Assembly (NCBI RefSeq): GCF_006345805.1
Contig: NC_042999.1
Span: forward strand, 148,428,001 to 148,492,000
DNA: 64,000 nt
Direction: 5' to 3'
Source: Octopus sinensis
Taxonomy: Eukaryota
Shown: in pieces, positions 525 to 37,305 of the stretch
Numbering within the stretch: position 1 is the first letter of the stretch
Layout: each line of letters opens with the position of its first letter
Position numbers and translations under genes: made by a program
The notes under the pieces: generated by a model
Database searches by the model: none
Told to the model about the DNA's origin: nothing
The model's input: only the letters and a program-made list of their open reading frames with translations

Positions 525-620
525 TCTGTCAACAATAGCTTCTGGTGCAGCCCATTTTATAGGAAACTTAATCCTTTTATCTAAAGCTCCAGTGTGATTG
601 GATAAACCAAAATCAGATAT
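525..620 (-). CDS. CSK: Activation-segment exon (96 nt): [32 protein letters not shown]
   Basis: Acceptor ttttacag|ATA and donor AGA|gtaagt. Contains DFG and APE; the short tyrosine-free activation loop is Csk-like. Confidence 0.93.
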
Positions 621-3600
621 CTGTAAAAGAAAACCTACATACAATAAACTTACAGTTACTAACATTTGACTCTGGCTTTCTGCATTTATAAAACAGGTGA
701 AAATACCCTAAATTAGATGGTGATGAGCAGTTTGAAATATAATACATCTATATTTGAATAGTATATAAATATCATATATACAAACATGTTGAGTAGATAA
801 AAACCTTATATAGACTGGAAACCAATAAAGAGACAAAAATTGGTACTCCATCAATTACGATAACAAGGGTTCCAGTTGATCCAATCAACGGAACAGACTG
901 CTCGTGAAATTATCATGCAAGTAACTGAGCACTCCACAGACATGTGTACCCTTAATGTAGTTCTTAGGGAAATTCAATGTGACAAGGCTGGCCCTTTGAA
1001 TTACAGGTACAATTCATTTTTGCCAACTGAGTGGACTAGAGTAACATGAAATAAAGCACATTGTTCAAGGACACAATGCACAACCAGGTATTGAACTCAC
1101 GGCCTTATGATCATGAGTCAAATACCCTAACCACTAAGCCATGTGCTTCATGACTGGAAACCTACATGTATATATGAACTGCATTGCTATCATGTATATA
1201 ATACAACATGCTTGTTTTTGAAACTGCATCCTCATTTGTATCCAACACTGTTTAACAAGGACAGAAAAGTATGAAACAGAGAAAAACAGATACAAAATAA
1301 TTTGTATATTTTAAGAGAGAGCTATTCTTTTAAACATTATTACACCAACATCAAAATAAAAATCAAATGGAAATTGTAGTTAAGATACCTGTGCCAGTGA
1401 CATGTAAAAAGCACTGTCCGAACATGGCAGATGCCAGTGCCGCCTGACTGGCGTCCGTGTTGGTGACACGTAAAAGCACCAACTGATCATGGCTGTTTGC
1501 CAGCCTCCTCTGGCCCCTGTGCCGGTGGCACATAAAAAATCACCCACTACACTCATGGAGTGGCTAGCATGGAAAACGGACGTTAAATGATGATGATGAT
1601 TATTACTGTTTATGTCTACTTTTTCCATGTTGTTATGGACTGGACCGTTTCACTTGTTAGCCATTCTTCAGCCATTAATATTGTTCTCTCCACCCAAATG
1701 TTACACTGATCATTCCCCCACCCCCACCACTGTACCACCAAATTATCTCTCCTCAAGCACACTTCTGCAGCCTACCCAACCACATGTCATCTCTCTCTCT
1801 CCTATCATCTCCCTGTCAACTGTATCATCATTATAATCCTGCTGCTGATTCCCCTACTTTCTTCTGCATCCCTTTACTTTTCCCAATTCATGGATCATTG
1901 GTCATTCCCCCATACCTTATCCAACACTCCTTACATCTGCCCTTCAACCCTACCCAATCTTTACAGTTGTTGCCTGCCTCCCCTCTCCTTGTCTCTTGCT
2001 CCCCTATAAACTCTTACAAACCTACAACTTTCCACACACCTAGTTCCTCTCTCCCCACTCACTTTTGTTTACCTCATTCCTTGAGGAGTCACCTGGACAC
2101 CTTAGCAGCATTATTAATCTCTATGCAGCTCCTACTTATCATTCTCACCCTTTCTTCTACATATGAATAGCCATGCAGCTCTCCTACACGAACCTGCTCT
2201 GCTACCCTCTTCTCTCATATTTAAACCCCTTCAAGAGTATCAGCTGTGGGAACTATGCCAAAGCAGACACTGGATTGTTATGCAATATTTGATGCATCAG
2301 ATCCTGTCAAATGTCCAACCCATGCTAGTATGGAATATGGACATTAAACAATGATGATATATATGACAAGATACCATACAGTTTTTGTCTAATAAATTTC
2401 ACTAACAAGGTACATGCTGTTAAGCGGTTGGCAATTAGAAAGATATTTAACTATTGAAGTTATGCCATAAATGAAACATACTAGTGAGACATAGCCCCAT
2501 CTTAACTACAATAATGACTCACCCAAACCATACCAACATGGAAAAAATGCAAAAGGGTTATTGTGGTGATAGTGTGTATGTGTGTATGAGAGAGAAATAT
2601 GCAAAACAGTCACAGTCATGTGACTACAGCTGGATGTCATTCTTAATGCCAACCACTTTACAAAATGTATTGGTTGCTTCCGTAACTCCAACTGAGTTGG
2701 GTATGGTACTGAAGAATATGAAAGGAGAGGGGAAGGTGTCTTGCTGAAGAGGTGAACACATGGTTTCTCTGTATTTATATAAATATTAAGAGGTAGACTT
2801 AATAGGCACAGGAGTGGCTGTGTGGTAAGTAGCTTGCTAACCAACCACATGGTTCCGGGTTCAGTTCCACTGCGTGGCATCTTGGGCAAGTGTCTTCTGC
2901 TATAGCCCCGGGCCGACCAATGCCTTGTGAGTGGATTTGGCAGATGGAAACTGAAAGAAGCCTGTCGTATATATCGTATATATATATATATATGTGTGTC
3001 TGTGTTTGTCCCCCTAGCACTGCTTGACAACCGATGCTGGTGTGTTTACGTCCCCGTCACTTAGCGGTTCGGCAAAAGAGACCGATAGAATAAGTACTGG
3101 GCTTACAAAGAATAAGTCCCGGGGTCGATTTGCTCAACTAAAGGCAGTGCTCCAGCATGGCCACAGTCAAATGACTGAAACAAGTAAAAGAGTAAAGAGA
3201 CTCAAATAACTTACCTTTACTTTGCCACAATTACTCAAAAGAATGTTCCGAGCAGCAAGATCACAATGGACCAGATGCTTACCTTCCAGATATTCCATTC
3301 CTACACAAATATCACTACAGTCAGACACATGCAAAATGAAAAGAAGAAAAATAGAAAAGGAATTAACTAAACTTTTCAAAGTAAAATATATTAGACATTA
3401 TCAGCATTGACTTGAGACAGAAAAAGAAAGAAACAAGCTACTGGAGGGATCTGGATTACATATCTATCACTTGTTTTAATTTCCAAGAGGTAAAGCATTT
3501 AATGCCCTAGCCAAAGTTGTATATACTGTGCCGGCCAAAATGCCATTACGTTCTGAGTTCAAATTCCGCCAAGGTCGATTTAGCCTTTCATCCTTTCGGG

Positions 3601-6600
3601 GTCGATTAAATAAGTACCAGTTACACACTGGGGTCGATATAATCGATTTAATCCATTTGTCTGTCCTTGTTTGTCCCCTCTGTGGGTTTGTCCCCTTGTG
3701 GGTAGTAAAGAAATATGTATTAGATGACATAAGAAAAAACAAGGATATATTAGCAGCAAAAAGCTTTTAGAACATTCAAGCATGAAATATAGGCTCAACT
3801 TCACAAATAGGGCTTGGTGGGATTTTTATTTTAAACACTGCTTTTTTTTTAAAAAAAAAGTGCGTCTATTCCACCAACAACAGTATGTCTGATATCGTCA
3901 ATTTATGTCAGAAAGATAAAGAGATAGATATGCAGATTAAGTCTTTTTAATTTCTTTTCCTATCTAAAATTAGTGCATATAATGTGTAAGAGAGAAAATG
4001 TTAACTCTAGTGTAAATTGTTTAATGACCATTTTCAATAGTGGCATGTTAGTTGAATGATGTGACAGGAGCCAACAAGCCAGAAAAGTATGAAAAGAGAG
4101 TGACAGATGGATAGAGATGGGAATAAAGGTGAAGAATGAACACAAGTAAAGATGTGGTCAATGGTAAATACCAGTTTAGAGGAGAAAAAATTTATGAAAT
4201 TTATCTTCAATGTTTATGCTAATACAAGACAGGCAGAACAAGAAAACATTTCCACAAGAAATTACAGATCTTTGGATGCCATTTAATGATTAACAACCAT
4301 TTTTCCATGCCCAACATGCTGAGATCTGATCTCACCACCTTTTAGAACAGGGGAGGAGAAACCCCCACCCATGGGTGCAATTGTACAGGCGAGCCCATTT
4401 TATTGCACCCACAGGCTGGCATATTTGTATGTACAAAATATAGTCAATTTTTCCATTATAAAATTGATACAATACTCGTATGCCTCTTTGCGACATAGAT
4501 TGCATTTCCACAACTTAAAACAGTTAGACTCAAACAGAAAACCGTCCAGCAATTGCCATTTGAATGGAAATTTTTTGTTTTCACTATAAAACACATATTG
4601 CTAGGTTTGTACCACCCCCTTGAGACCCAACTACACTCTAGCTAAAAAATATAAAATACCTCATAAGTAATATAAACGTCCTAAATTCAGTGGCGGCATG
4701 TTACATGTTAATTGAATATGTTAAACTTATCTTTATTAATGTATATCAAATTATACATGGATATATACAAGATATATACACAGATATAAGAGTTAAAACT
4801 TGTGATCTACCTGTGGACCTTTTTTTGAAAATTTTTGCCTGCCACACTAAAAAGTTTCCCCACCCCTGTTTTAGAACTTCAGGAGCTTTGATAATCCTTT
4901 CATTTCTAGTGGTCTGGAAAAGAAAGATTTGGAAGCTTATGGATTCTTTGAATACGATGTGGACCCAACAGAGGGACTGGCTATCCAAGTTGACAGCAGC
5001 CTGATGGATAAAACGATATGAAGACTGGGAAAGCCCTTGGCCCCTTAGGAATTATTATTGAGATGCTTAAAATAGCTGGCTGAGTGGGATATAGCCCAGT
5101 CATCTAAAAAGTTAATCAGGTTATCCAGAAGGGTCATATCCCAATGACTGGTGTAGCAGCATTATAGTCAAGTGCCACAAAGGTAAAGGAGATGCCGTAC
5201 ACAGAAGTAATCACAAAGGTATCAAAGTGCTGGACCAAGTCATGAAAGTTACAAAAAGGGTTGAAGCCCATCTGATTAAGAAGAGCATTAACCTAGATGA
5301 AATGCAGTTTGATTTTGTACTAAGGAGAAGTACTACTGGCACTATCTTCCTAGTAAGAGAAGCATTTAACAAAAAAATAAACTACACCCTCTTGCAGACT
5401 AACTCATCGACAATAACAGGGATCTTCTCTTTGTGGCTGGCAACTTCAATGGTCATGTTGAACAACATCCAGGGAGCTTCCACAGTGTATATGTTGGCAA
5501 TAATTTTGGCTCCTGCAATGGGGAGGGAATAAGGCTGCTGGAGTTCTGTGATGCAAATGATCTTATGATCTGTAATAGTAACTTCAGAAAACCTGCCAGT
5601 CACCTGTTCACCTACAAGTCTGGTTAACTACATTCTGGCCAGGAAACAGGAAAGATGGCTACTCATAAATACCAAAATTTCCCAGATGAAGAATGCACCC
5701 CTCCCTACATAGGTTAGTAGTTAGCAACTTCAGGATCAGGGCTAAATGGCTACCCAGAAGACAACCAGCATGGAAAAGAAGGGTCTGGAAGCTTAAGGAT
5801 CCTCTGAATGGACAGAGATTTAGAGACATATTGCTTGAAGCTTTTGACAAAAAAGAGGTGGATATAGCATCACACAATGTGGAGGACAACTGGAAGTTCC
5901 TACAGGACAACCTGTTGAAGTCTACTGACCAGACCTGTGGTTGGTGCAAAGTCCCCTCTCACCCTAAGGTAACATAATGGTGGAACAATGTAGTTGACAG
6001 GGCCATTACGAAAAAGAAACAGGCACGGAAGGACTGGAAGTGTGGTTGTAGCAGGGAACTGTATCAGATTGCCAGAAGGGAAGCTAGGAGACAGGTTTAC
6101 TTAGCCAGAGGGGAAGCAGAAAAATTTGCCAATGTTCTGCATCGTGAGGACCAAAGACTTGAAGTGTCTCGTATTGCAAGACAGTCTGTGAGAGAGAATC
6201 ATGATGTCATAGGAGAGAAAAATATATCTGCATGGATAATGCAGAAAAATATATCTGCATGGATAATGACTCACTTGCATTTAATGAGGCTGCAAAGAGA
6301 GAGACTTGGAGACACCACTATGAATGATTGCTAAATGAAGAGAATGAATGGGAGAAAGAGTCTGCCAAATGTTGACCCAACAGAGGGACCAGCTATTTGT
6401 GCGTGTTTATTTCTCCTTTCCTTGAAGTTAAGTAATAGTTGTAAATGAGCCTGACTATCACTTAAACAGTGTTGTTTGTTCCTCATTTTCCATGAAAACA
6501 TGTTCGACCACAGGAAAATATTTTCTATTTTTAATATCACATATATCAAATTTTGCTGTTGTTTATTTATTTTTTTCAAGTTGAAAGCGTTTAGTCACTT

Positions 6601-7005
6601 AGCTTCTCAACCTTTATCCTTAGTCAGAGGTAATGATTCAGCAAGAAAACATACAAAAATAATCAAAGAGGATTACAATAACAAAAATTATATATATAAA
6701 GACACAGAAGTGGCTGTGTGATGAGTAGCTTGTTCACCAACCACATGATTCCAGGTTCACCTTGGGCAAGTGTCTTCTACTATAGCCTTGGGCCGACCGA
6801 AAACTGTGTGTGTGTGTTTGTCCCCCCACCATCACTTGATAACCGATGATGTGTTTACAACCCCATAACTTAGTTGTTTGGCAAAGGAGACCAATAGAAT
6901 AAGTACTAGGCATACAAAGAATAAGTCCTGGGGTCGATTTGTTTGACTAAAGGCAACAGTCAAGACAACTAAAAGAAAAAAAAATATATATATATACATA
7001 CATAT

Positions 7006-7044
<39 letters not shown>

Positions 7045-10000
7045 CAATGCTAGTATCTTACAATGATGAATTCAGTTGCCATTCCTCAGTGATGCTATCT
7101 CTACCTCGAGACCGTAGGTAGTTTGCGAGATTTCCTTCATCCATATATTCCATAACTAGGTAAACATCCTTGTCAAGCACGACGCCAATTAGCTGTAATA
7201 CATTTCGGTGATTCAACGTACTGCAAAATAAAAAATGAGAAACAGTTAATGTAATCTGCTGTAGCTAGTGTAGTACAGTATTGTACTTATAGTCACTAAA
7301 ATATAGCTACTCTATCTCTGACAAAATGGCTGTCAGTGCAACTTTTTGTCCCCGTCAAATTTTATCCAACAAATGAATGTCTCAGTTGTTTAAGCCAGTG
7401 ATGCCCTAACTTTTTCGGGCTGCAGCCCCCTTGACACCCAGGCCACATTCCTAGCATCCCCACCCTAACTAACCATCACAAACATAGATCACTTTCTGAA
7501 GCAAATTCAAAACAACTGCATTTCACAAATAAAACTTAACCTAATGAACCCATTATTTTGTTGTTTTTACGTGAATTGCTACCCCATTATCACCCCAATT
7601 TTTACATGAATCACTACTCCATTATGGGCCCCACTTTTCTTCAACACCCTCTTGGAACTTTCACTGCTCCTAGCAAGGCAATACCGCTTACTTTGGGAAC
7701 CACTGGTTTAATCAACAGAATTATTTCTGTTAATTCTGGATTATACTGTACTTACTCAGTGCAACTGGTTGAGTATTCCAAGAAAACTATTACACCCCTA
7801 ACGTAACCTTCAGGCTGACTATGAAGATGCATAGCTTAGTGGTTTGAGTATTTGGGTCACAATCATAAGGTTTTGAGTTCAATTCCCGGCAACGCGTTGT
7901 ATCCTTAGACAAGACACTTTATTTCACATTGCTCTGGTCCACTCAGCTGGCAAAAATGAATTGTGCTAGCAATTCAAAGGGTCGGCCTTATCACATTTTG
8001 TGTTATGCTGAATCTCCTTGTGAACTACATTAACGGTATGTGTGTCTGTGGAGTGGCACAACCACTTGCATGTTAATGTCACGAGCTGATTGTTCCATCA
8101 ATAAGGTCAACTGAAACCTTCATTGTCATAACTGATGGAGAGCCAGCTTATAAATAACAGGTACGCTTAACCCTGATAGGCTTTCTGTCTGTCAAACTTT
8201 CCTTATTTGACTTGGGGGTCATCCAGTGATGCAGAAATCAAACAGTATCATTGTGCTAAGCAATGGAACCAGAGTCAGAACCTAACAATTGTAACTGAAC
8301 TTCTGAACCCCTCAACCATGCACCCTTAAGAATTAAGTAATATAAAGTTTATTAACCTTGAGAGATCCTCTCATACAGATACTTGATTTCCAGTAGAATA
8401 AAATCACATGATACAGGTGTTTCAGCACTCATGACAGATGATTCACAACTGCTATGATCTATGTGCATGCTTTTATGAACAAAGTGCCTATAAGAGAGGG
8501 TCTTCTAAGGCTATTAATGCACTATTTGGTGTTCTTGCATAGTAAGGTGTATATAAGGATTACTTCTGTCACTAATAATTAACTTATAATAAAGATTATG
8601 CTAATTAACTAATCCATTATTTGTGGAGATAAAAATTAGCAGAAAAATATATACAATATAGGCACAGCTGTGGCCATGTAGGCACAGGTGTAGTTATATA
8701 GGTGCAGGTGTGGCTGTGTAATAAGTAGCTTGCTTACCAACCACATGGTTCCAGGTTCAGTCCCACTGCATGGCAGCTTGGGCAGGTGTCCTCTACTATG
8801 ACCTTGGGCCAACCAAAGCCTTGTGAGTGGATTTCATAAACAGAAACTGAAAGAAGCCCATTGTATATATATGTGTATGTGTATATATATACGTGTGTGT
8901 ATGTATGTGTTTTGTGTGTCTGCATTTGTACCCCCAACATCACTTGACAACCGTTGTTGGTGTGTTTATGTCCGCATAACTTAGCAGTTCAGCAAAAGAG
9001 ACTGATAGAATAAGTACTCGCACCTTGGGCAGGTGTCTTCTACTATAGCCTCGGGCCGACCAAAGCCCTGCGAGTGGATTTGGTAGACAGAAACTGAAAG
9101 AAGCCAGTCGTATATATGTATGTGCGTGTGTGTGTCTGTGTTTGTACCCCCAAAATCACTTGACAACCAATGCTGGTGTGTTTACGCTCCCGTAACTTAG
9201 CAGTTCGGCAAAAGAGACCGATAGAATAAGTACTAGGCTTACAAAGAATAAGTTGTGGGGTCAATTTGCTCGACTAAAGGCGGTGCACCAGCATGGCCGC
9301 AGCCAAATGGCTGAAACAAATAAAAGAGTAAAAGAGTAAGAGTCTTCAATAAGGAGTTCCCCAACAGTGTACTAAGCTTTATTTAGTTTCTTAATTCTTA
9401 AACAGATAGAAGTGGTGAAAATGTCACTCACTGTTTGTTGGTTGATAGTTGACTATAACAGAGGTTAATGCTTTTCAATAAATGTATCTATAAAAATCAC
9501 TGCATGATGTAATACATATACAGTACACAACATAAACACTACACTGCCTAATACTATTAAGTGGTATAACATGTATAGTGCTAATTATAATGCAGTCTAG
9601 AATAATTATTATGTGAACTGATACCAGAAGACTCACAACCTCTCATTCTTCATGATAACCCACCACACCTGTAGCAATGTTAAAGTATCAATGGCTAAGG
9701 CCTTCTGCATGAGTAGAAATTATTTAAGTTCTGTTAGAAAAAGCAACTAAATCTCCTTTGAATTACACCTAACCTTTTCAAATGATATATTCAGTAATAT
9801 AACTCCTAACTATTGCTGAATAAAATATGGAATGACACAGCTGGAATATCCCAATCATTGTTTACCTGAGGTTTAACAACTTCAGCTCTGAACAACTGCT
9901 GATTGTCTCCATAGTAAAAAGATGACCCAGATTAAGTTACTATTCAAATATTTAGGACAACGCTGCTACCACACACAGACAAATATCACAGACTGGAGAA

Positions 10001-13000: not shown

Positions 13001-13192
13001 GGTGGCAAGCTAGTAGAATTGTTAGCGGTATTTTACCCATTGCTACGTTCCGAGTTCAAATTCCACTGAGGTCGACTTTACCTTTCATCCTTTTGGGGTT
13101 GATAAAATAAGTATCAGTTGAACACTGGGGTCAATGTAATTGACAGGTCCTCCTCCCCTAAAGTTTCAGGCTTTGTGTCTCCAGCAGAAAGG

Positions 13193-13232
<40 letters not shown>

Positions 13233-16200
13233 CAACGAACTGGTAGAATGTTAGCACACTGGACAAAATGCATAGCAGTATTTCATCTGTCTTTACGTTC
13301 TGAGTTCATCCTTTTGGGGTCGATAAAATAAGTACCAGTTGAACACAGTGTTCAACTGGTACTTATTTAATCAACCCTCAAAGGATGAAAGGTAAAGTCG
13401 ACCTTAACGGAATTTGAACTCAGAACGTAGTGACAGGTGAAATACCGCTAAGCATTTTCTCCAGCGTGCTAACAGTTCTGCCAGCTCGCTGCCTGAATAA
13501 TAATAATAATAATAATCCTTTCTACTGGAGGCTCAAAGCCTGAAATTTTGCAGGAGAGGACCTGCTGATTACATCGACCTCAGCATTCAACTTGTGCTTA
13601 TTTTATTGACCCCAAAAGGATGAAAGGAAGAATCGACTTTGACAGAGTCCCTAAACTTGCTGCCCTTGTGGTAAAATCTGAAACCATTATTTTAAGGTCA
13701 ATTAAGATGGCACGTTGGCAGAAGTATTAACATGCAGGGCTAAATACTTAGCAGCATTTTGTCCATCATTACATTCTAAGTTTGCCTTTCATCGTTTCAG
13801 GGGTCAATGAAATAAGTACCAGTTGAGCACTAGAAGTCACTGTAATTAACTTCCACATCCCTCAGAATTTCTGGCCTTGTCCCAAAATAAGAAAGGATTA
13901 TTTTAAGGTTATCATCATCATTGTCGTCGTTTAACTCCACTTTCCATGCTGGTATAGGTTGGACGGTTTGACTGAAGGCTGCACCAGGCTCCAATTTGAT
14001 CTGGCAAGTTTCTACAGCTGGATACCCTTCCTAACACCAGCCACTCCAAGAGTGTAGTGGAGTGCTTTTTATGTACCACCGGCATGAGGGCCAGTCAGGT
14101 GGCACTGGCAAACAATCATGCTTGAACGGTGCTTTTTACATGCTGCCGGCACAGGACCAGTCAGGCGACACTGGTATCAACCATGCTCAAATGTTGCTTT
14201 TTATGTGCCACAGACACAGGTGCCAATCAGGCAGTACTGCCATCATCCGAAACAACGATTTCACTTGCCTCAACAGGTCTTTAAGCACAGCTTAAAACAA
14301 AATATTCGTCTAGTACCAAGATCTGTGATATCAATTAACCCCTGCCACCAAAATTTCATGCCTTGTGTCAATGGTAGAAACCTATTATTATTAACTAAAT
14401 CATAGGCCTTTTAATATACTTTTCAATTTTCTTCTGCCACAATATTTATAATCACTTCCTAACATCTTAGTACATCTATAATATCCAGTTGATGAAATAG
14501 CCTCCACACAATTGCCTGAGTTGCTGAAACTAGCAGACAAATCTCCCTCAAATTACATGCTACCAATGTAAAGAAGGAGACTGTAGTACAAAAAGATACA
14601 ACTGACACACTTGAAGTGTGTTTCATCATAAATCTGCTGGATTCCTGTCTGATTCAAGATTAAACTGCAAAACCACCGTTCTCAGAACTCTCGCTTAAAC
14701 TCAGTCAAGATTAATATTTAAAAAGAAAGGCACCGACAAAAAAGCAGCAGTAGTTACCATAAGATTCATTAGTCCTAAATAATATTTAGGTATGCATACC
14801 ATGAATGATAAATGCAGATCAGCAAATGTCACATGCTAAGACCATCTTTTCTACCATAGCTACCATCAGAACAAAGAGGCCAATAAAATATACTGGAACT
14901 ATAAAGAGTTTGCAATACCCACATGATAAATCAATGCATATTGGAGTGTATAGATTTGGACTCAACTAGATGAAGGCAAAGAATACCTAAAGCATGAGCT
15001 TTGTTGACTGTGCTAAGTCATTTGACTAACAACCTACATGCAATCCAGTTTGATAAGAACTACACAAGAAATTTATATACCAAGTTTAATGGCTTGCCTT
15101 CATTCAGTATGTAGCAAAAGAAATTCCAAAATGATTTTTATAGGAAGTGCACTCAAATGACAGAGCCAGTAACTAAGCTGTCTGACGTTGAAACAAAATC
15201 AAAATCAATTTGTTGTTTCTCATCTTATGTTTACAGATACCTTCAAAGCTGCTACAAATGCTGGACTGCACTATCTCAGATTATCTTTTCTGGTGACTTC
15301 TGGCTAGAAGGATATTGAGCTTAATTTGATAACCAGCTGATCTAGCAAGCAAGGCCTCATATCAGTGAGGGGGCCCGGTATGCATTGATGCCGTCAAGAG
15401 GTAGGCCCCGAAACAGTGCGCATTCTCTCCTGATGACCCCATACACTTGCTGGCTTCCAGTATACGGAGCTTTTGACTGGTAGCACTTGCATGTGCAAGT
15501 TGTTTGAAAGACATAGATAATGTAGCAAAAATTGCATCCAAAATAATAATCAGCTTTCTTTCTTTGAACCAGACGCAATTACAGCTCTTGTGCAACTGCT
15601 GATGATCTACAAAGCTCATGTAAACTGGATATTGCTACCACATAAAGGGCAGTACAGCTGCTACAATCCCTAGGACATAGGTATCGGTGTTTCTCCACTC
15701 TATTCTATCACTACTACAATAGGCTCTGCTTCCCTGAACCAGCTAATTGGATATCGTCTCCAACCAAGTCCATACCCTGACACACTTATCTTTCCCCTCT
15801 TGTCACCCATTTGGAGTCTCTTCTCCCAGAGACTCCACACTGACCACTATGCCCTACCTTTACCTTCACACCTCATAATGTCAAATTTCTGATTCTCTTC
15901 CTCCCCCACCCTTAGATAATCAAATCCAACTTAAATCTTATCAGCTCCACCAATCTCAGAGGTCAAGGAATCTGCCCTATTCTCCTGACCAAGCAGAAAA
16001 AATATATAAACAGAAAAAAAAATGGAAGTTCCTTACGTCATTACATTAGCTTCTTGAACAAACTGGTCAGTATATTCCATGTTTACTAACTTTTTCACAG
16101 CAACTGGCTTTGATTTGTAACAGGCTTCATACACTTCTATGTATGACAATAACAATAAAAGATAAAAATAAAATAAGCAGAAAAAAAAAATTAACAAAGG

Positions 16201-19200
16201 TGATATTAAAAAAAATTTTTTAACAATTCTTCATCACTAACTTAGCAAATTGTAGTTAAACATTGTCTTTTATGAACTTAAAAATAAAGCTTCTTATTTA
16301 ATATGATTTCAATACGTTTTTCATAATGACAACTGTTATACAAAGAGTTTACTTTGCCCACCTTTACAGCAGTGATTATCTTAGAGGCCAACAGGAATAT
16401 AATGGACAGTTAAGGGAATGCAACATATTTTGATTAATACACACTACTCTATATGATAACTCACTGTTAGATTTTACTGGTCTCAACAAAGACAAGTCAA
16501 GATATATCTGGAGTTCCAGATCTGCAAACTATATAAATGTCAGGTCCACATTTTCTCTGAGGCTTATAGCTCAGAAATATTTTAGAGCAGAGTTAGAAAT
16601 GTTTTTCTGTAAAAATAATTCACATGAGATATGGTACATTTTATAAAATTTGCATGCATCATTACCAAAACAGATCTATTTGCTAAAGAAAACCTTCAGC
16701 ATTTGTACAAAGTGACAAGCGCAAGTGGTAAAAATGATAGCATTCAGACTGCTAACTGAAAAATCTTCTCCACTTCATATTAAATCATTGATGTGCAGTG
16801 TACATAACCAAGATAACTAGAAATGGTTCAATTCACCTAGTTGTAAGTAATTACCAAATATCATTAAAGTAAGTAACAGACACAACATAAAAATAATAAT
16901 AATGAAATTATTGTATACAGTGCTCAGGTGCACCACAACTTGTCAAAAAGTGCATATAAAATATATGCAGTAATGTACAAATGTCTGGAAAGCAAACAGT
17001 GTATGAGTCAGATACATGCTTGCGTGTGTATGGAGGGGAGAAAATCAGGTGTAGTGTTGGCGAATCTCAGGAAGCATGGAGTTTTGAAGGATGCAGTGCT
17101 CTGACAACTAACAACTGATGCCGGCAGTTTGTTCCATGCTTCAGCAACTCTCAGCGTGAAAGAATGTTTCCAAAAGTGATGGGAGCTGTGCTGTTTTCTG
17201 ACTTTGTAAACATGTCCACAGGTGTTAGACAGGTGGAGTTTGAAAAGGTGCTCAGAGTTATTGTTTGTAAGATGGTTAATAATTTTATGGGTGTCTGCCA
17301 AGTCAGCTGCCAGACGTTGGAGTTTCAATATATCCATACCCAGGGAAGTAAGGCGTTCAGAATATGGCAAATGCCTGATGGAGAGTATTCTGTTGGTTGC
17401 ACGTCGCTGAACGACTTCCAGACGATTAATATCCTGGGCAAGATAGGGGTTCCAGACCGGTGATGTAAATTCCAGGTGAGGTCTTACCATGGCTATATAA
17501 AGCCGCAGATAGATAGCTGGAGAGCGGCTCACAAAGGACTTGGTGAGTGATGCCATAGTCAAAGAATACTTCATTAGCTGACTGTGTTTGTTAAAAACCA
17601 CCTATCAGCAAGCTTGGAGAGCAATGGGTCCTGCAAAGCTGACTTTGTCTAGATATTTTTGTTAAAATAAGCTGATAACACTTCCACAATACGCAAAATA
17701 TTTTAACTATTTTTTAATACAATTCCCCATAATATTTAATTATTAAAATATATGATTTTTTAAAAACAGTGACTGGCTAGGAGGGTCCATTTAAGTATAA
17801 AAGGAATAAAAGTGGTCCATATATAAAAAAAAAATGGTTGAGAAAAACTGGTCTAGATACTAAAATAAAGATGAAGTTTACAGTGAGTTTCAAACAGACA
17901 TACATACATCATATATATATATATATAGTCCCTCAGGAAGCCCAACATGGTGAGGAGAGTGATTGTTGGACACCCTGTGGGATGAAAAATAGACCTGTCA
18001 AAGAGCAGAACTACTACTGTGTAGTCAGCAGACAATTCAACAAGTACCTTGCCGCGGTGAAGTGCTTGTGTGCTCCATTGACCTGGAGAGCTATGCTTGA
18101 GGGAGAGAAATCTTCAGGCAGGCCTTACCAGGCCAGACAGGTTGAAGGGTAGGAGACAGACAAAACCTTAACCATTAGAGGAGTAGGCCTCAATGACAAT
18201 AAATCAAAGCGTCAGCAGCAGGGCATGGATTTAGTTATTGGTAGGACCTAACAGATCAGATCCATTGCTTTGAACTAACAGGATGTCATGCAGAGGATCT
18301 TGAATACAAGACAATGTATAAGACCCTAATATTCCAAGTTAGATGGAAACTGTGGGACCATACGGAGCAGTGCCTTACAACTCTTATAGTATGCACAACC
18401 AAAATATATAAATACAGTTAGATAAGGCCAGTTTCTGGTATTACACTGGGTTTCACATCATAAAGTGCTTAGCGTTGCGGCATATCATCAGATCCCAGCC
18501 TGTTGGCTTATGGCCTCTCTAGAAAATGGAGGAGAAAAGGACCTTGCTACTCAATGTCAACAACAAGGGATTGTCTTCTTTTGGCTGTTGATCACAAATG
18601 ACCCTGTTATCTTGTGGGTTCCAAAAGGCCAGCAGGAATTTCCTGAAATGTGAGCACAGTCCAAAGACCTCCATTCTGAAGTTAAGGATGTTCCTCGGGT
18701 CAAGGGTATCCTTTAGCATCCTTGCCCATTCTGCTATGCACATTTATGTAGGGGCTTAGTTTTTCTAGAATTCTCCATGATATTGTGTGTGGGATCCCAT
18801 CATCCTTCAGCTGCCATACATGGCTGGCTAATGACATAATGTATCTCCTTTCTGGTATCCTGAAGGAGGATCTGTAATTGGAGAGGTTCTGCTTGAATGT
18901 GTTACCAGAGCAACAGATGTATCTGTGCTCAGGTGTTGGCAGTACTGCATCTGTTGGTGTTTTCATTGCTGCTAATGCTGTTGTTGGTACTGGCACAAAC
19001 TAATATCCGCAACTGGATAAATTTTTTTACACGAAATATTTGCAAGATTTGGCGTTCAAGACATGATAGTGTTTGACAACGGAATGCAATTTGTATCAAG
19101 TGAATTTTTAAAATTTTGTGAAATGTTCACAGTTGAACATGTAACTACAGTGCCATACCATCCTAGGTCTAACGGACAGGCAAAACACTTATTTTAACTA

Positions 19201-21426: not shown

Positions 21427-21464
<38 letters not shown>

Positions 21465-24400
21465 TGTGTACAGTGCTCAGGTGCACTACAACTCATCTAA
21501 AGTGTATATATAATCAGGTGTAGTTTCGGCGGATTTCGGAAAGCATGAGTGCCTTAAAAGATGCAGTGTCATGGCAGTCAACAACTGACGCAGGCAGTTT
21601 ATTCCATGCTTCAGCAACTCTGAGCGTGAAAAAATGTTTCCGAAAGTCATGGGAGCTGTATTGTTTTCTGACTTTGTAGGCATGTCCACGTGTGTTAGAC
21701 ACATGGAGATCAAAAAGGTGTTCAGTGTGTTGTTGGTGAGGTGGTTGATAACTTTGTGGGTATTTACCAAGTCCGTCGCCAAACGCCGGAGCTTCAGTGA
21801 ATCCATGCCCAGGGAAACAAGGCGCTCAGAATATGGTAGGTGTCTGATGGAGGGTATGCGTTTGGTTGCACGTCTCTGGACAGATTCCAGGAGGTCAATG
21901 TTCTGTGCAAGATAGGGGTTCCAAACTGATGATGCGAATTCCAAGTGTGGTCGTACCATAGCTGTATACAGTTTTAATAGATGGCTGGAGAGCGGCTAAC
22001 AAAAGACCTGCTGAGTGATGCCAAGACACCTCGGCCTTCCTGACAATCTTAGAGATATGCTTTGACCAACGCAAATCACTGCTGACAGTGATGCCTAGGT
22101 CACGCTCGCAAGAGGATTTCTTGATATCAGTGTTGTGGAGGGAGTAAGTGAACGCAGGGTTTTTTCTCCCAAAATGCATGGTGGTACACTTGTCCACAGC
22201 CAGTTTCAGTTGCCAGTCTGTGATCCATTGCTGCATTGTGTCTAGGTCTGATTGCAGGAAAGAGTTGTAGACATCAGGATCTGTCCTCTTGATTTCAAGG
22301 TACAGCTTGATGTCGTCTGCATATTTCAATACTGTGGCATTCTTTAAATTGGCATAGCAAATTTCCTTTAGGGTGTACATATTTTTGTAACGTTTGAAAA
22401 TTAATATTTCATTCATATCTTTGAAAATGTTTACTGTTTTGTGTTCTAAATTTGTATTGTTTGCATGTATAATATATTTTATTCAGTATAAATTTTGTTT
22501 GGTTTCCTTTGATATTATCAGAGTAATGACAATTTTACTGAAATGCTTTTAGGGATGTACATAATCCTGAGATACTATATATATATATAGTTAATCCAAA
22601 CATGAACAAAGAGAAAACACAACAACGTGAGGATGTGTAATAAGTATATATATATATATGTGTGTGTGAGTGTGTGTATGTATGTATATATCAGAGTAAA
22701 AGGTAGACTGTACGACGCATATGTACGAACAGCCATGCTACATGGCAGTGAAACATGGGCCATGACTGCTGAGAACATGCGTAAGTTCACAAGGAATGAA
22801 TCCAACATGCTCTGATGGATGTGTAATGTCAGTGTGCATACTCGACAGAGTGTTAGTGCCTTGAGAGAAAGGTTGGACCTAAGAAGCATCAGATGTGGTG
22901 TGCAAGAGAGACGACTGCGCTGGTCATGTGGCGAGAATGGATGTGGATAGCTGAGTGAAAAAGTTCCACACCCTAGCAGTTGAGGGAACCTGTGGAAGAG
23001 ATAGACCCAGGAAGACATGGGATGAGGTGGTGAAGCATGACCTTCAAACACTGGGCCTCACCAAGGCAATGACTAGTGACTGGGACCTCTGGAAATATGC
23101 TGTGTTTGAGAAGACTCAGCAAGCGCAAGTGAGACCATAACCTTGTGACCTACATCAGGAGTGTAACCAGTCCACTTATGCGTGCCTTTCCTTCAATGGA
23201 TACTAAACTCTGCTTGTGAAGACTTGTTGAGGCAAGTGAAATCGAAAGCAAATTCGATGACTGGCATCCGTGCTAGTGGAGCACTAAGAGTACCATACGA
23301 GTGAAATCAGGACCAGAACAACAAGATGGCCTCTGTGCCAATTGCACATTAAAAACAGCATTCGAGCATGATCATTACCTGTATCGCCTTACTAGCACTT
23401 ATTTTTTGTGTAATGCAATGACTTTTCCTAAGTATTACAATATATGTAGAAAAATAAAGAAACGTTTAGTTGAATAAAATACTTTGGAAATGTTCACACA
23501 TTCTAAATGAAACAGGATACAAAAGTGCACCTGTTATATAAAGTGAACATTGTTAAAAAAACCACAGCATCGTGTTTTTTCATGATAAAAGGCATATTAC
23601 ATGCAAATAAATGTAGTAACTATGCTAATTTTCAGAATAATTAACATATACGTATTATACATGTAAAGACTGAGTTGTATCAGGCTGACTTTTCTTTTTA
23701 AAGATAAGGTAAAGAAGGAAGAGGTAAGATACATGACCACTGTAAGTCTTCTGAGACCAGTGAGCTTGATATTGTTAATGTTCCATTTAAACTATTGTAG
23801 GTCAACACTGGCTGGAAAGACATGCGCAGAGAGAAGGCTCAAGAGAGGCAATATTTGGGGGAGAGAGGACTGGTTAGTGGTTGGTGCAGGGCCAAGTGTG
23901 TTGGATACAACAAGGATGATGAGAGATAGAAAGAGTAGCAAGCTCCAAGGAAGAGAGACCAGCAGAGTAACAGCAGAAAAAACAGAGAAAGGAGACAGAG
24001 TACCAATGGATCAGAGGCAAGAGAATATCAATTAATGATTGAATGCTAATTAATCAAGAGGCCCTTCACTAGATGCAGTCCAGCATATATGGGTGCTATT
24101 TGATGTAAGAATCTTCTATATAATCTGCTTGATTGTTTTCATCATGGAATTCTTTATAGTTTTGCTTCCCTGGGCATGAATACATTACAACTCTTGTCTT
24201 CTTCTTGTCTTGAGACAACATTCACCTGGGGTGGGTTGAGCTGGCTTCATTCATCCTTAATGCTGCATCGCTCACAAGCGCCAACCAGACCTGGTGATTT
24301 GATGCTAACAACCGCTTGATCTCCAACCACTCCTTATTTCAGCAGCGAACACCATAGATATGGAGGCCTAGGTTGGGTTCCAGATCAGCCTTGACTGTCA

Positions 24401-27037
24401 TCAGCCATGTTTTTCGTTGCCTACCACATCGCTTTCACAAGCCATGAAGGGGAGCTGGGGCAATTGCTTCGTAGATGAATTCTCCTGGTTGATGATGAAG
24501 GGCATGACCCAGCCAACGCAGATGTCTCGTTAGGATGACTTGTCGGAGGGAGGTGATTTTGCACTGGTGCTGCACCGAATTGTTGGAGACAAAGTGATGC
24601 CATCGGACACAAAGGATGCAGCGTAGACAGAGGTGATAGAAGGATTCTAGTTGCTTAATATCTTCCACCCTCATCAGCCATGAGAACAATGGAAGAAAAT
24701 TAAAGCTCTGATATCTGGCAACTGACTTGGTAGACACCCACAAGATTATCCATCATCTTTTCAACAACAACCTTGGACACCTTTTTGAATTCCATGTATA
24801 ACACTCATGAGCAGCTTTAACTTGTGTTTTTCTTGGTTATATTGTCAAGCTGAAAAGTGCTTATTTTGCTTTTGGCAATTAATTTTTATTTTTGATGTTG
24901 CATAAAAAAACGTCTGCATTCTGTTGAAATGTGGGTTCACATTTAGGTTATTATTGTGAGAGAAGTTTGTTGTTGATGCTGCTAGGAGCCTCTGATGTGA
25001 AATATATTTGTGATGTCGAGTATATCAATAAGTTCCAATAAGGAATGTTGGTGGAGCATTCTCAAAAAAATGGTCTGAAATAGATCTGATGTTGTTTGAA
25101 ATATAAAAAAAATATGTAATGGTACTTTTTACATGCCACCAGCATGGGTGGAAGACAGGAGGCACTGGCATTAGCCATGACTATGATTCCACTTGATTCA
25201 ACATGTCTTCTCAAGCACAGGATGTTGCCCAACAATTGAAGGGTACTTTTAATCGAGTTGGTAATGCAACACTGACATTGGCCATGGCTGCAATCTCACT
25301 TGGCTTGCTGGGTCTTTTCAATCACAGGATATCTTCAAAGGTTTTGGTCACAGGTCATTGCATCTGTGAGGCTCAACGTTTGGAGGTCAGGCTTCACCAC
25401 CTCATTCCATGTCTTCAACAGATCCCCTCCACTGTTAGGATGTCATACTTCTTCACACAGCTGTCCTCGTCCATACACAACACATGACCATACCAGCACA
25501 GTTGTCTCTCTTGCACACCACATCTGGTGCTTCGTATGTCTAGCTTTTCTTTCAGGGTGCACACTGACATCATACATCCAGTGGAGAATACTAGCTTCAT
25601 TTCTTTCAAGCCTATGTATGTCCTCAGCAGTCACAGCCCATATTTCACTGCCGTGTAGCATGGCTGTTCACACACATGCATCATACAGTCTACCTTTCAC
25701 TCTGAGCAAGAGGCCTTTTGTTAGCAGCAGTGGTAGAACTCTCTGAACTTTTCCCAAGTTATTCTTATTCTAGCAGCCACACTCTCAGAGCATCCACTCC
25801 TGCTACCAACGTGGTCAACTAGGTAACGGAAGCTATGAACTTCTAGTTTTTCCCCCTGGCATGTGATAGAATCTGTTTTCTGTACATCTTTGGTGTTTAT
25901 TGCTCCTGTGCATCTGCCACACAAAAACTATCTTTCCAGTTAGCCTTCTTTTGATATTGCTGCACCTCTTATGTGTCCATAGCTTACACCGAGTACATCT
26001 TATGGAGTTTCTACCTATGCCTTTTCTACAGATTAAGCAGGACCATCTACCTGAAGGGATTTGTGATTTGTCTGCCTTCCTACTTAGTGAGATTGGAATG
26101 ACATTGTAGAGTAGGTGTGAGAGGTTAATTCTAGCCAGTTTGAACATAAAACAGGTAGAATATTTAAGCCAGATATAACTCGTTTAAATGCTAAAGGACT
26201 AAATATTTTCACATGTCATAGCAATTCCAATAATAACTTAAATATCAGCTGGCTGATACCCTAGCATCTTAAGCCTTCATGCTCTCCTTAGAAATATTGG
26301 TTTCAAATTTTGGCACAAGGCCAACAATTTCGAGGAATGGGGTAAATCAATTACATTTATCCCAGTGCTTAACTAGTACTTATTATATTGACCCACGAAG
26401 GGATGAAAGGCAAAGTTGACCATGGCAGAATTTGAACTCGGATGGACAAAATGCCACTAAATGTTTAGCTCAGTGAGCTAACAACTCTGCCAACTCACCA
26501 CCTTTCTCCTTAGGAATACTATTGGATTGGTGCATAATTATTGCAGCATTTTTCCAACAAATTTTATTCAACAAAAAAAATAACAACATGTAACAAAAAA
26601 AATCTTTAAATGATTATTCCAGAGCATATTCACCATCTACTTCAATTACTGCTTCCCATTTGCTCAGCAGATGGTCAGACCATCATTTAAAAATGTTTTT
26701 GTTAAATATTGTTATTGTTTTTGTTGAATAAAATTTGTTGAAAAAACGCCGCAATGATTATGCACCAACCCAATAAATCTAATACTTACCACTAAACTCT
26801 CCTTTGTCAAGAAAGTCCTTCAACTCAATCGCATCAGAATTCAGTATGCAGCCAAGGTCTTTCAAATTTGATCTTAAAGAATTAGTGTCGCAAACAGGAT
26901 GAGTGAGACAAATGTTCAAATGTAAAACGCAGTTATAATACTAAAATGATAAAAAACAAAAAAAGGTAAGTAGAAGATTATATAGAATTCAAGGTATCTA
27001 ACAACTTAATATCTTAACATCAATATACACACACACA

Positions 27038-37264: not shown

Positions 37265-37305
37265 CTCCAATCTTTCAAAGCATCCAGTTGTGTCATGATT
37301 TCTCT
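37265..37305 (-). CDS. Candidate N-terminal exon of the kinase: (REI)MTQLDALKDW-R
   Basis: ATG at 37296 with A at -3, and a strong donor AG|gtaagt at 37264. Phase 2 fits the SH2 exon directly. A possible acceptor ttttag| lies at 37306. No homology support. Confidence 0.45.

What the first reader, a model, noticed from the sequence alone, without database searches (positions are those of the whole stretch)
3215..26940. Csk-like kinase with an HCD catalytic loop and eroded Gly loop but intact Src-docking motif
Seen: HRD is HCD (TGT at 3263-3265, one C-to-T step from CGT), GxGxxG is DKGEFS, and the gatekeeper is Met (LVMEY versus Csk IVTEY). VAVK, the alphaC Glu, catalytic Asp, AARN, DFG, APE, SH2 FLIRES and RSRGR are retained, and the exons are open and spliceable. 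Established: Csk represses Src-family kinases, docks them through R279/R281/R283 and has no activation-loop phosphotyrosine, so the HRD Arg is less needed. Inference: either a non-RD active kinase or a low-activity scaffold or non-catalytic Src inhibitor.
Basis: partly seen in the sequence, partly recalled or inferred. Interest (0 to 1): 0.7.

Follow-up and report, generated by a model that had tools for sequence, protein, structure and literature searches.

The report
Fast-evolving SH3-less octopus Csk duplicate
This is a real, intact octopus gene: a second, SH3-less copy of the Src-repressing kinase Csk that sits on the same chromosome as the normal copy, carries His-Cys-Asp instead of His-Arg-Asp in four octopod genomes, and changes about ten times faster than the normal copy; whether it still works as an enzyme is untested.

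Summary
On the minus strand of the window (Octopus sinensis CM016861.1) lie seven of the nine coding exons of RefSeq XP_029633376.1, named "tyrosine-protein kinase CSK". It has HCD (TGT at 3263-3265), DKGEFS and LVMEY. VAVK, the alphaC Glu, the catalytic Asp, AARN, DFG, APE, FLIRES and RSRGR are intact.

HCD is not a read error. It is present in O. sinensis, O. vulgaris, O. bimaculoides (all TGT) and Argonauta hians (TGC).

- A canonical SH3-SH2-kinase Csk with GKGEFG, HRD and a Thr gatekeeper exists on the same chromosome, apparently as the neighbouring gene.
- This copy has no SH3 domain and no Trp188 equivalent.
- It evolves very fast: 81% amino-acid identity between two Octopus species against about 98% for canonical Csk, with dN/dS about 0.8. 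It has no stop or indel.
- The Met gatekeeper is private to O. sinensis, and the first-Gly change is reversed in O. bimaculoides.

HRD-to-HCD left Drosophila Src64 fully active, so HCD alone says little about activity. My best reading is a weak but competent, SH3-independent, Chk-like Csk paralog that acts on Src-family kinases. This is a new variant of a known kind, of moderate interest.

The parts
37265..37296 (-). Coding exon 1 (ATG at 37294-37296; MTQLDALKDW + 2 nt), GT donor
   Evidence: Identical to O. vulgaris exon 1. The same short start peptide type is found in Argonauta (MEKHRGDLTDWR). No SH3 is encoded upstream in the window.
33868..34087 (-). Exon 2: SH2 domain (WFHG...FLIRES at 34003-34020...HYHIQ)
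   Evidence: Pfam SH2 matches residues 12-86 with E 1e-23. The FLVRES Arg (CSK R107) is kept.
26790..26940 (-). Exon 3: end of SH2, shortened SH2-kinase linker (GC at the Trp188 position, 26842-26853) and Gly loop DKGEFS (26791-26808; Asp codon GAC 26806-26808)
16037..16136 (-). Exon 4: beta3 VAVK (16093-16104) and alphaC Glu (QEANVM 16039-16056)
   Evidence: K222 and E236 equivalents are kept.
7062..7220 (-). Exon 5: gatekeeper Met (ATG 7151-7153, Leu in the other species), hinge, and alphaD docking motif RSRGR (7100-7114)
3215..3314 (-). Exon 6: catalytic loop HCDLAARN (3245-3268; Cys codon TGT 3263-3265)
525..620 (-). Exon 7: DFG (606-614), activation loop without Tyr, PIKWAAPE (540-563). 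Exons 8-9 lie beyond window position 1.
   Evidence: The remaining exons were seen in L004/L001.

Best explanation
The window holds most of an intact, selectively maintained gene (RefSeq XP_029633376.1 of Octopus sinensis). It is an octopod paralog of C-terminal Src kinase, with an SH2-kinase architecture and no SH3 domain. It lies on the same chromosome as the canonical Csk and is apparently its neighbour.

Shown here:
- The nine-exon structure and the synteny with GART are conserved from Octopus to Argonauta.
- HCD is fixed in all four genomes.
- The catalytic Lys, Glu, Asp, Asn and DFG, the tyrosine-kinase signatures AARN and PIKWxAPE, the SH2 phosphotyrosine-binding Arg, and all five Csk substrate-docking residues are kept.
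- Amino-acid change is about tenfold faster than in canonical Csk.

Inferred mechanism: the protein is still a phosphotransferase. It is recruited through its SH2 domain, docks Src-family kinases through the alphaD RSRGR/F382 surface, and phosphorylates their C-terminal tail tyrosine. It probably does this weakly, because it lacks the SH3/Arg68-Trp188 contact that activates the Csk catalytic domain and has Asp at the first Gly-loop position. Stoichiometric, Chk-like binding may therefore contribute to inhibition.

My estimates are about 0.95 that the identity and paralog status are right, about 0.65 that measurable kinase activity is retained, and about 0.6 that Src-family kinases are the target. 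The confidence given for this explanation (0.55) is for the whole statement, mechanism included.
For: Gene model and identity:
- The window is 100% identical to O. sinensis L004 over positions 1-47296.
- The encoded protein matches P0502 = XP_029633376.1.
- Exons 2-9 have identical lengths in O. vulgaris, O. bimaculoides and Argonauta. In O. sinensis this was checked for exons 2-7 only. GART lies convergent downstream in all four.

Canonical copy:
- P0327, P0329 and P0508 are SH3-SH2-kinase proteins with GKGEFG, HRD and a Thr gatekeeper. Each is on the same chromosome as the paralog.
- The O. vulgaris accessions are consecutive: CAI9720293 (paralog) and CAI9720294 (canonical).

Family placement:
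- The protein falls inside Csk/MATK with 100% bootstrap against Src and Abl.
- The best PDB sequence hit is Csk 1k9a, E 8e-91.
- The AF2 model has pLDDT 86. Its best fold hit is 1k9a, and its kinase domain matches Csk 3d7u_A with TM 0.93 and rmsd 1.3 A.

Residue map.

Constraint:
- There are no indels in 1086 coding nt, against 7.6 gap openings per kb in 14 kb of aligned introns.
- P(no stop | 103 random substitutions) = 0.004.
- dN/dS falls from 1.86 at sites variable in canonical Csk to 0.54 at sites conserved in canonical Csk for O. vulgaris vs O. bimaculoides. For Octopus vs Argonauta it falls from 0.96 to 0.17.
- The Cys codon differs synonymously, TGT vs TGC.

Precedents from the literature:
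- Src64 R403C has kinase activity indistinguishable from wild type (PMC3223231).
- Substitutions of the first Gly of EGFR, G719X including G719D, are reported as sensitising/driver mutations of lung cancer (PMC9953181). That they activate the kinase is my own knowledge.
- The docking residues and the Arg68-Trp188/SH3 activation of Csk are described in PMC10016382.
- Chk is a poor catalyst but an efficient non-catalytic inhibitor (PMC5547543).
Against: - No transcript or protein evidence was examined. The close protein clusters have NCBI, UniRef, eukprot and MetaClust sources only, and no Logan transcript contig, whereas canonical Csk has one.
- dN/dS is about 0.8 between the two Octopus species. 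About a third of the positions that are at least 90% conserved in canonical Csk have changed, so constraint is weak.
- Retention of the five core catalytic residues is only mildly improbable by chance given that background: p about 0.11 for five residues and about 0.02 for nine.
[quoted passage not shown] This protein lacks SH3, the Arg68 linker and Trp188.
- Neighbour status of the two genes rests on accession order and a shared chromosome, not on seen sequence. The canonical gene is not within the 26.7 kb upstream that the window covers.
Confidence: 0.55

Rival explanations
1. Catalytically dead or near-dead pseudokinase. It works only by binding: a stoichiometric, Chk-like non-catalytic inhibitor or SH2-guided scaffold for Src-family kinases.
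For: - The SH3 domain, the Arg68 linker and Trp188 are lost, and these are needed to activate the Csk catalytic domain (PMC10016382).
- The first Gly-loop residue is Asp in three of four species.
- 40 positions that are at least 90% conserved in canonical Csk are changed in all three paralogs.
- The docking surface is fully retained.
- Chk shows that a Csk-family member can inhibit mainly without catalysis (PMC5547543).
Against: - None of the residues whose loss defines pseudokinases is missing. The beta3 Lys, the HxD Asp, Asn and the DFG Asp are kept through about 41% protein divergence.
- The tyrosine-substrate motifs AARN and PIKWxAPE are kept.
- HCD and first-Gly changes are compatible with activity in other tyrosine kinases (PMC3223231, PMC9953181).
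Confidence: 0.25
2. Neofunctionalised active kinase under positive selection. It has left the Src-repression role and phosphorylates other, lineage-specific partners, for example in immunity or reproduction, which are typical settings for fast-evolving genes.
For: - Nonsynonymous divergence between O. vulgaris and O. bimaculoides (0.096) exceeds intron divergence in the same gene (0.070).
- dN/dS is 1.86 at positions that are variable in canonical Csk.
- 34 of the 67 differing residues also differ in Argonauta, which suggests repeated change at the same sites.
- The SH2 domain diverges fastest: dN/dS 0.6-0.8.
Against: - dN/dS against the gene's own dS is below 1 (0.79).
- The class with dN/dS above 1 rests on only 3.5 synonymous differences.
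- Intron divergence from blastn chains may be biased low.
- The five Src-docking residues are invariant, which argues that Src-family kinases are still the partner.
- Only three or four sequences are available, so no site test was possible.
Confidence: 0.12
3. Decaying duplicate, unexpressed pseudogene, or artefact of gene prediction or assembly.
For: High dN/dS within Octopus. No transcript evidence was seen here. The O. bimaculoides model uses a different first exon with a GC donor.
Against: - The reading frame is open, and exons 2-9 have identical lengths in three species (exons 2-7 checked in O. sinensis) across dS about 0.8.
- There are zero indels where about 8 are expected from the intron rate (P about 3e-4), and P(no stop) = 0.004 for the Octopus pair alone.
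- The constraint gradient follows the Csk fold.
- Four independent assemblies agree on HCD.
Confidence: 0.03

Closest known systems
Canonical C-terminal Src kinase (Csk), e.g. octopus XP_029633373.1 / rat Csk PDB 1k9a
   Same: - SH2 plus tyrosine-kinase domains.
- Docking residues R279/S280/R281/R283/F382.
- No activation-loop Tyr, and an activation loop of the same length.
- No regulatory tail Tyr and no myristoylation site.
- Catalytic K/E/D/N/DFG.
- 44-47% identity to mollusc Csk. The model's kinase domain superposes on Csk 3d7u_A at 1.3 A.
   Different: - No SH3 domain or SH3-SH2 linker (so no Arg68).
- Trp188 is Cys or Tyr.
- The SH2-kinase linker is 5 residues shorter.
- G202 is Asp, G207 is Ser or Cys, T266 is Leu or Met, R313 is Cys.
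- About one third of the universally conserved Csk positions are changed.
- Roughly tenfold faster protein evolution: 81.5% vs 97.5% identity between O. vulgaris and O. bimaculoides.
Csk-homologous kinase Chk/MATK of vertebrates
   Same: A second, more divergent Csk-family copy that coexists with Csk. Chk is a poor catalyst that inhibits Src-family kinases largely by tight binding (PMC5547543). That is the functional model that best fits a handicapped but docking-competent paralog.
   Different: The octopod gene comes from an independent duplication. It does not group with vertebrate MATK, which clusters with vertebrate CSK. Chk keeps SH3 and HRD, and this protein has neither.
Non-RD kinases and the Drosophila Src64 R403C allele
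   Same: The catalytic loop is HxD with Cys in place of Arg. Src64 R403C keeps wild-type kinase activity (PMC3223231). Non-RD kinases as a class are functional signalling kinases (PMC8463890).
   Different: Src64 R403C is an induced allele in a kinase with an activation-loop phosphotyrosine. Here the Cys is a fixed natural state in a kinase without that site. Natural HCD Csk-like proteins also occur in Mesocestoides corti and Neoechinorhynchus agilis. Those arose independently and keep other differences.

Membership tests
Csk family (Csk/Chk non-receptor tyrosine kinases) | Kinase domain groups with Csk/MATK rather than with Src, Abl or other SH2 kinases | tested here: met
   NJ tree: all Csk/MATK plus the paralogs separate from Src-like and Abl-like outgroups in 100% of 200 bootstraps. 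The best PDB sequence match is 1k9a Csk. The best fold matches are 1k9a and 3d7u.
Csk family (Csk/Chk non-receptor tyrosine kinases) | SH3-SH2-kinase domain order | tested here: not met
   Pfam finds SH2 plus PK_Tyr_Ser-Thr only in the O. sinensis, O. bimaculoides and Argonauta proteins. It finds SH3 in the canonical octopus Csk. There is no SH3-like exon in the window.
Csk family (Csk/Chk non-receptor tyrosine kinases) | Substrate-docking residues Arg279, Ser280, Arg281, Arg283, Phe382 (PMC10016382) | tested here: met
   All five are identical in O. vulgaris, O. bimaculoides and Argonauta. RSRGR is at window 7100-7114.
Csk family (Csk/Chk non-receptor tyrosine kinases) | No activation-loop autophosphorylation Tyr, short activation loop, no C-terminal regulatory Tyr | tested here: met
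   The loop reads [21 protein letters not shown]. It has no Tyr and aligns without gaps to canonical Csk. The C-terminus is ...TPLFGSLV.
Csk family (Csk/Chk non-receptor tyrosine kinases) | Activation of the catalytic domain by the SH3-SH2 linker Arg68-Trp188 contact | tested here: not met
   No residue aligns to Arg68. Trp188 is Cys in O. vulgaris and O. sinensis, and Tyr in O. bimaculoides and Argonauta.
Csk family (Csk/Chk non-receptor tyrosine kinases) | [quoted passage not shown] | not testable with these tools
   This needs a kinase assay with octopus Src.
Catalytically competent eukaryotic protein kinase (canonical motif set) | beta3 Lys, alphaC Glu, HxD Asp, catalytic-loop Asn, DFG Asp | tested here: met
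   The K222, E236, D314, N319 and D332 equivalents are kept in all species.
Catalytically competent eukaryotic protein kinase (canonical motif set) | GxGxxG and HRD Arg | tested here: not met
   The loop is [12 protein letters not shown] or DKGESC, and the catalytic loop is HCD. Both positions tolerate substitution in active tyrosine kinases (PMC3223231, PMC9953181).
Pseudokinase (sequence definition) | Loss of at least one of the beta3 Lys, the HRD Asp or the DFG Asp | tested here: not met
   All three are present in all four genomes.
Pseudogene | Stops, frameshifts or loss of splice sites | tested here: not met
   The ORF is open with AG/GT sites (one GC donor, in the O. bimaculoides first exon). 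Lengths of exons 2-9 are identical in three species (exons 2-7 checked in O. sinensis).
Vertebrate Chk/MATK orthologue | Groups with MATK in a phylogeny | tested here: not met
   MATK sequences cluster with vertebrate CSK. The octopod clade stands apart on a long branch.

The most novel reading that the evidence does not exclude
Octopods independently evolved their own Chk-like second Csk. It is an SH3-less, non-RD paralog under recurrent positive selection that restrains Src-family kinases mainly by docking rather than catalysis, in convergence with the vertebrate Csk/Chk division of labour. A further untested twist concerns the Asp codon GAC at the first Gly-loop position. A-to-I editing of the A at window 26807 on the minus strand would make it read as Gly, which is the state hard-wired as GGC in O. 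bimaculoides. ATP-site competence could then be tuned at the RNA level.
Probability: 0.15. Interest if true: 0.65.

Novelty: new variant of a known kind. Interest (0 to 1): 0.4.

Why it matters
Csk is the universal brake on Src-family kinases and is normally among the most conserved tyrosine kinases. Octopus Csk is about 70% identical to oyster, snail and brachiopod Csk.

A second copy has been kept for the whole Octopus-Argonauta history. It has shed the SH3 domain and the HRD arginine, keeps the Src-docking surface, and changes almost as fast as neutral sequence. That makes it a natural experiment on which parts of Csk are needed for what. It is also a possible parallel to the vertebrate Csk/Chk pair.

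HCD has now been seen independently in three Csk-like lineages and in an active Src64 allele. This supports the view that the HRD arginine is dispensable in this kinase group.

The practical stakes are modest. The gene is already in RefSeq under a generic name, and its function is unknown.

Tried and rejected
1. Read error or private allele for HCD: rejected. Four assemblies agree, and one carries a synonymous codon change.

2. 'This is the octopus Csk': rejected. Canonical copies were found.

3. SH3 remnant in the window: tblastn with the canonical octopus SH3 and linker gave only chance-level hits, E above 1.

4. Retrogene origin: rejected, because the coding region has eight introns.

5. 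Placing the duplication in the tree: failed. The NJ tree puts the long octopod branch at the base of the family, next to another long-branch HCD protein. This is most likely long-branch attraction. Origin from a mollusc Csk rests only on best identity (46-47% to octopus and Littorina Csk) and on chromosomal proximity.

6. Fetching the canonical Csk loci to prove adjacency and to get its dN/dS: the three look-ups found no record. I used protein identity instead, plus a small GART yardstick of 63-100 codons.

7. Orthologues outside Octopoda: none in the exhaustive search or the family-profile search. Scores drop from 760 to 382 bits. This is absence of evidence only.

8. RNA structure around the candidate editing site: no excess stability (z +0.4 to +0.8), and the A is unpaired with P(paired) 0.08.

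9. Literature: nothing on cephalopod Csk or on the accession numbers.

10. The look-up of the old partial O. bimaculoides model failed. The full model XP_052822685.1 was used instead.


Full report
WHAT IS IN THE WINDOW

The window is eukaryotic, about 38% GC. Positions 1-47296 are 100% identical to Octopus sinensis chromosome CM016861.1 of assembly GCA_006345805.1 (locus L004). It is about 99.2% identical to O. vulgaris OX597816.1.

The feature lies on the minus strand. I mapped the O. vulgaris coding sequence exon by exon. This gives seven coding exons in the window:
- 37265-37296 (ATG at 37296)
- 33868-34087
- 26790-26940
- 16037-16136
- 7062-7220
- 3215-3314
- 525-620

All internal boundaries are AG/GT. 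Two more exons (87 residues) lie beyond the left edge of the window.

The 286 residues encoded in the window equal RefSeq XP_029633376.1, 'tyrosine-protein kinase CSK [Octopus sinensis]' (P0502). The gene is therefore already predicted, under a generic name. I found no paper that mentions it or a cephalopod Csk paralog.

CHECK OF THE OBSERVATION

| Motif | Window position |
|---|---|
| HCDLAARN (TGT 3263-3265) | 3245-3268 |
| DKGEFS | 26791-26808 |
| VAVK | 16093-16104 |
| alphaC Glu (QEANVM) | 16039-16056 |
| LVMEY | 7145-7159 |
| RSRGR | 7100-7114 |
| FLIRES | 34003-34020 |
| DFG | 606-614 |
| PIKWAAPE | 540-563 |

HCD is not an error or a private allele. The codon is TGT in O. sinensis, O. 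vulgaris and O. bimaculoides, and TGC in Argonauta hians.

- The Met gatekeeper is specific to O. sinensis (ATG). The other three species have Leu.
- The Gly loop is less 'eroded' than stated. The middle Gly is kept. Ser or Cys at the third Gly also occurs in canonical HRD-bearing Csk, for example GKGEFC in beetles. The first position is Asp (GAC) in three species but Gly (GGC) in O. bimaculoides. With Argonauta as outgroup, that looks like a reversion on the O. bimaculoides lineage.

IT IS A PARALOG, NOT THE OCTOPUS CSK

A search with a canonical invertebrate Csk returned canonical copies in two Octopus species. These are 448-450 aa proteins with SH3-SH2-kinase order, GKGEFG, a Thr gatekeeper, RSRGR and HRD. 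The O. bimaculoides copy (459 aa) came from a cluster look-up.

In each species the canonical protein is on the same chromosome as the paralog. In O. vulgaris the two have consecutive accessions, CAI9720293 (paralog) and CAI9720294 (canonical). I infer that they are neighbouring genes and so a tandem duplication. I did not see the interval. The canonical gene is not within the 26.7 kb upstream that the window covers, and three look-ups of the canonical loci failed.

The paralog sits convergent to GART in O. sinensis, O. vulgaris, O. bimaculoides and Argonauta. In O. vulgaris, O. bimaculoides and Argonauta it has nine coding exons, and exons 2-9 have identical lengths: 220, 151, 100, 159, 100, 96, 87 and 177 nt. 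In O. sinensis I checked exons 1-7 in the window and saw the last two exons as protein matches in L004. These are orthologues, and the duplication predates the Octopus-Argonauta split.

Neither the exhaustive representative search nor the family-profile search found any member outside Octopoda. The score drops from 760 bits for Argonauta to at most 382 bits for any single-domain Csk/MATK. Unannotated copies in squids cannot be excluded.

FAMILY PLACEMENT

- Pfam sees SH2 (residues 12-86) and a tyrosine-kinase domain (123-363), and no SH3 in any of the three paralogs. It sees SH3 in the canonical copy.
- A relaxed tblastn with the canonical SH3 finds nothing in the window.
- The best solved sequence relative is full-length Csk 1k9a, E 8e-91.
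- An AlphaFold model of the O. vulgaris protein is confident: pLDDT 86, pTM 0.83, low only in the activation loop.
- The model's best fold match is 1k9a. Its kinase domain superposes on the Csk chain of the Csk-Src complex 3d7u_A with TM 0.93 and rmsd 1.3 A.
- In an NJ tree the octopod clade is inside Csk/MATK against Src-like and Abl-like outgroups in 100% of bootstraps. It sits on a very long branch at the base, next to another long-branch protein, which I read as long-branch attraction. The tree does not date the duplication.
- The paralog is not a MATK orthologue.

RESIDUE MAP IN CSK NUMBERING

Kept in all three full-length species:
- R107 (the SH2 FLVRES Arg)
- K222, E236, H312, D314, R318, N319, D332-F-G
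- the docking residues R279, S280, R281, R283 and F382

Changed:

| CSK position | State in the paralog |
|---|---|
| R68 | no equivalent (no SH3-SH2 linker) |
| W188 | Cys or Tyr |
| G202 | Asp or Gly |
| G207 | Ser or Cys |
| T266 | Leu (Met in the window) |
| R313 | Cys |
| D227, T229, E258, M150 | also changed |

The SH2-kinase linker is five residues shorter.

According to the Csk review PMC10016382:
- The five docking residues are what make Csk recognise Src.
- The isolated catalytic domain is intrinsically inactive.
- The Arg68-Trp188 cation-pi contact mediates activation by SH3.
- R68A, or SH3 deletion, costs more than 10-fold in activity.

RATE AND SELECTION

Protein identity:

| Comparison | Paralog | Canonical Csk |
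|---|---|---|
| O. vulgaris vs O. bimaculoides | 81.5% (67 of 362 residues differ) | 97.5% |
| Octopus vs Argonauta | 59% | not available |
| Octopus vs oyster, snails, Lingula | not applicable | 67-71% |

Nei-Gojobori estimates:

| Pair | dN | dS | dN/dS |
|---|---|---|---|
| O. vulgaris vs O. bimaculoides | 0.096 | 0.121 | 0.79 |
| Octopus vs Argonauta | 0.31 | 0.83 (near saturation) | 0.37 |

Comparison with the introns:
- Introns of the same gene, over 14.2 kb of collinear alignment, differ by only 0.070 and have 7.6 gap openings per kb.
- Nonsynonymous sites therefore change at least as fast as introns. Yet the 1086 coding nucleotides have no indel, where about 8 are expected, and no stop.
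- The probability of no stop under 103 random substitutions is 0.004.

The constraint still has the shape of the Csk fold:

| Site class in canonical Csk | dN/dS, Octopus pair | dN/dS, Octopus vs Argonauta |
|---|---|---|
| at least 90% conserved | 0.54 | 0.17 |
| 50-90% conserved | 0.66 | 0.45 |
| variable | 1.86 | 0.96 |

Both Octopus lineages are accelerated. About half of the differing sites also differ in Argonauta.

A small yardstick from the neighbouring GART gene (63-100 codons) gives 96% identity for the Octopus pair, and 90.5% identity with dN 0.05-0.06 for Octopus vs Argonauta.

I conclude that the gene is under selection to stay open and folded. Purifying selection is very relaxed, and positive selection may act on part of the surface. 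With three or four sequences I cannot separate relaxation from adaptation.

HOW IT MOST LIKELY WORKS

HCD by itself is weak evidence for loss of activity:
- The same substitution in Drosophila Src64 (R403C) leaves kinase activity indistinguishable from wild type and almost no phenotype (PMC3223231).
- Non-RD kinases are functional as a class (PMC8463890).
- HCD has arisen independently in Csk-like proteins of the cestode Mesocestoides corti and the acanthocephalan Neoechinorhynchus agilis.
- Substitution of the first Gly of the loop, including to Asp, occurs in the EGFR G719X mutations of lung cancer (PMC9953181). That these activate the kinase is from my own knowledge.

The residues whose loss defines pseudokinases are all kept. 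So are the tyrosine-kinase substrate motifs, the SH2 phosphotyrosine Arg and the docking surface.

Against full activity stands the loss of SH3, the Arg68 linker and Trp188. About a third of the universally conserved Csk positions are also replaced. Keeping five or nine catalytic residues is only mildly improbable against that background: p about 0.11 and about 0.02.

My best reading is a Chk-like second Csk. It is recruited through its SH2 domain, docks on Src-family kinases through RSRGR/F382, and remains able to phosphorylate their tail but probably weakly. Binding itself may contribute to inhibition, as shown for vertebrate Chk (PMC5547543).

Steps shown: the gene model, orthology, paralog status, the residue map, the fold and the rates. 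Steps inferred: transcription, activity, Src as the target and tandem origin.

NOVELTY AND SCORE

The gene is annotated but undescribed. It fails one defining feature of the Csk family (the SH3 domain) and one canonical kinase motif (the RD Arg), and it meets the others. I therefore file it as a new variant of a known kind.

A kinase specialist would find the HCD unsurprising. The parallel with Csk/Chk, the speed of evolution and the recurrence of HCD in Csk-like proteins are moderately interesting.

A SPECULATIVE SIDE IDEA

The Asp codon GAC at the first Gly-loop position would read as Gly if its A (window 26807, minus strand) were A-to-I edited. O. bimaculoides encodes GGC there. I found no supporting RNA structure, and I have no read data.

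Noticed in passing
window 17008-17601(-), 21486-22416(-), 41224-41712(+), 57782-58360(-), 45390-45860(-): ORF fragments that by eye look like non-LTR retrotransposon reverse-transcriptase pieces, plus one Tc1/mariner-type transposase piece. They lie in the introns and upstream region of the gene.
   Followed up: no
window 22691-23247, 25412-26086, 41288-42216, 57235-58053; also 40666-42275: Several copies of one dispersed repeat family, 76-90% identical to each other and to copies elsewhere in the O. vulgaris and O. sinensis loci.
   Followed up: no
P0245 (Mesocestoides corti), P0247/P0269 (Neoechinorhynchus agilis), P0264 (Pomphorhynchus laevis), P0088 (Hydra Ret-like): HCD catalytic loops occur independently in other animal tyrosine kinases, including two Csk-like proteins of fast-evolving parasites. 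The sample is biased, because the query itself has HCD.
   Followed up: partly
P0420-P0460 (beetle Csk), P0330/P0332, P0012/P0168: Otherwise canonical HRD-bearing Csk proteins have Cys or Ser at the third Gly of the Gly loop (GKGEFC, GKGEFS). That position is therefore loosely constrained in the family.
   Followed up: partly
window 26806-26808 (Asp codon GAC, minus strand; A at 26807): A-to-I editing of this A would recode Asp to Gly and restore the first Gly of GxGxxG. O. bimaculoides has genomic GGC here. No unusual RNA structure was found around it.
   Followed up: partly
L003 10001-10185 (O. bimaculoides): The O. bimaculoides model XP_052822685.1 starts with a different, longer first exon (185 nt, GC donor) that encodes 62 residues with no recognisable domain. 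The O. sinensis exon-1 region has no match in that locus.
   Followed up: partly
P0311 (Haliotis rubra CSK-like): An otherwise canonical abalone Csk model reads HEDLS in the catalytic loop. This could be a real variant or a model or assembly error.
   Followed up: no
L004 61310-64890; L001 59527-65432; L002 41013-42456; L003 41290-49795: The trifunctional purine-synthesis gene GART lies convergent just downstream of the paralog in all four octopods. It is a useful synteny anchor, and it lies outside the window.
   Followed up: partly
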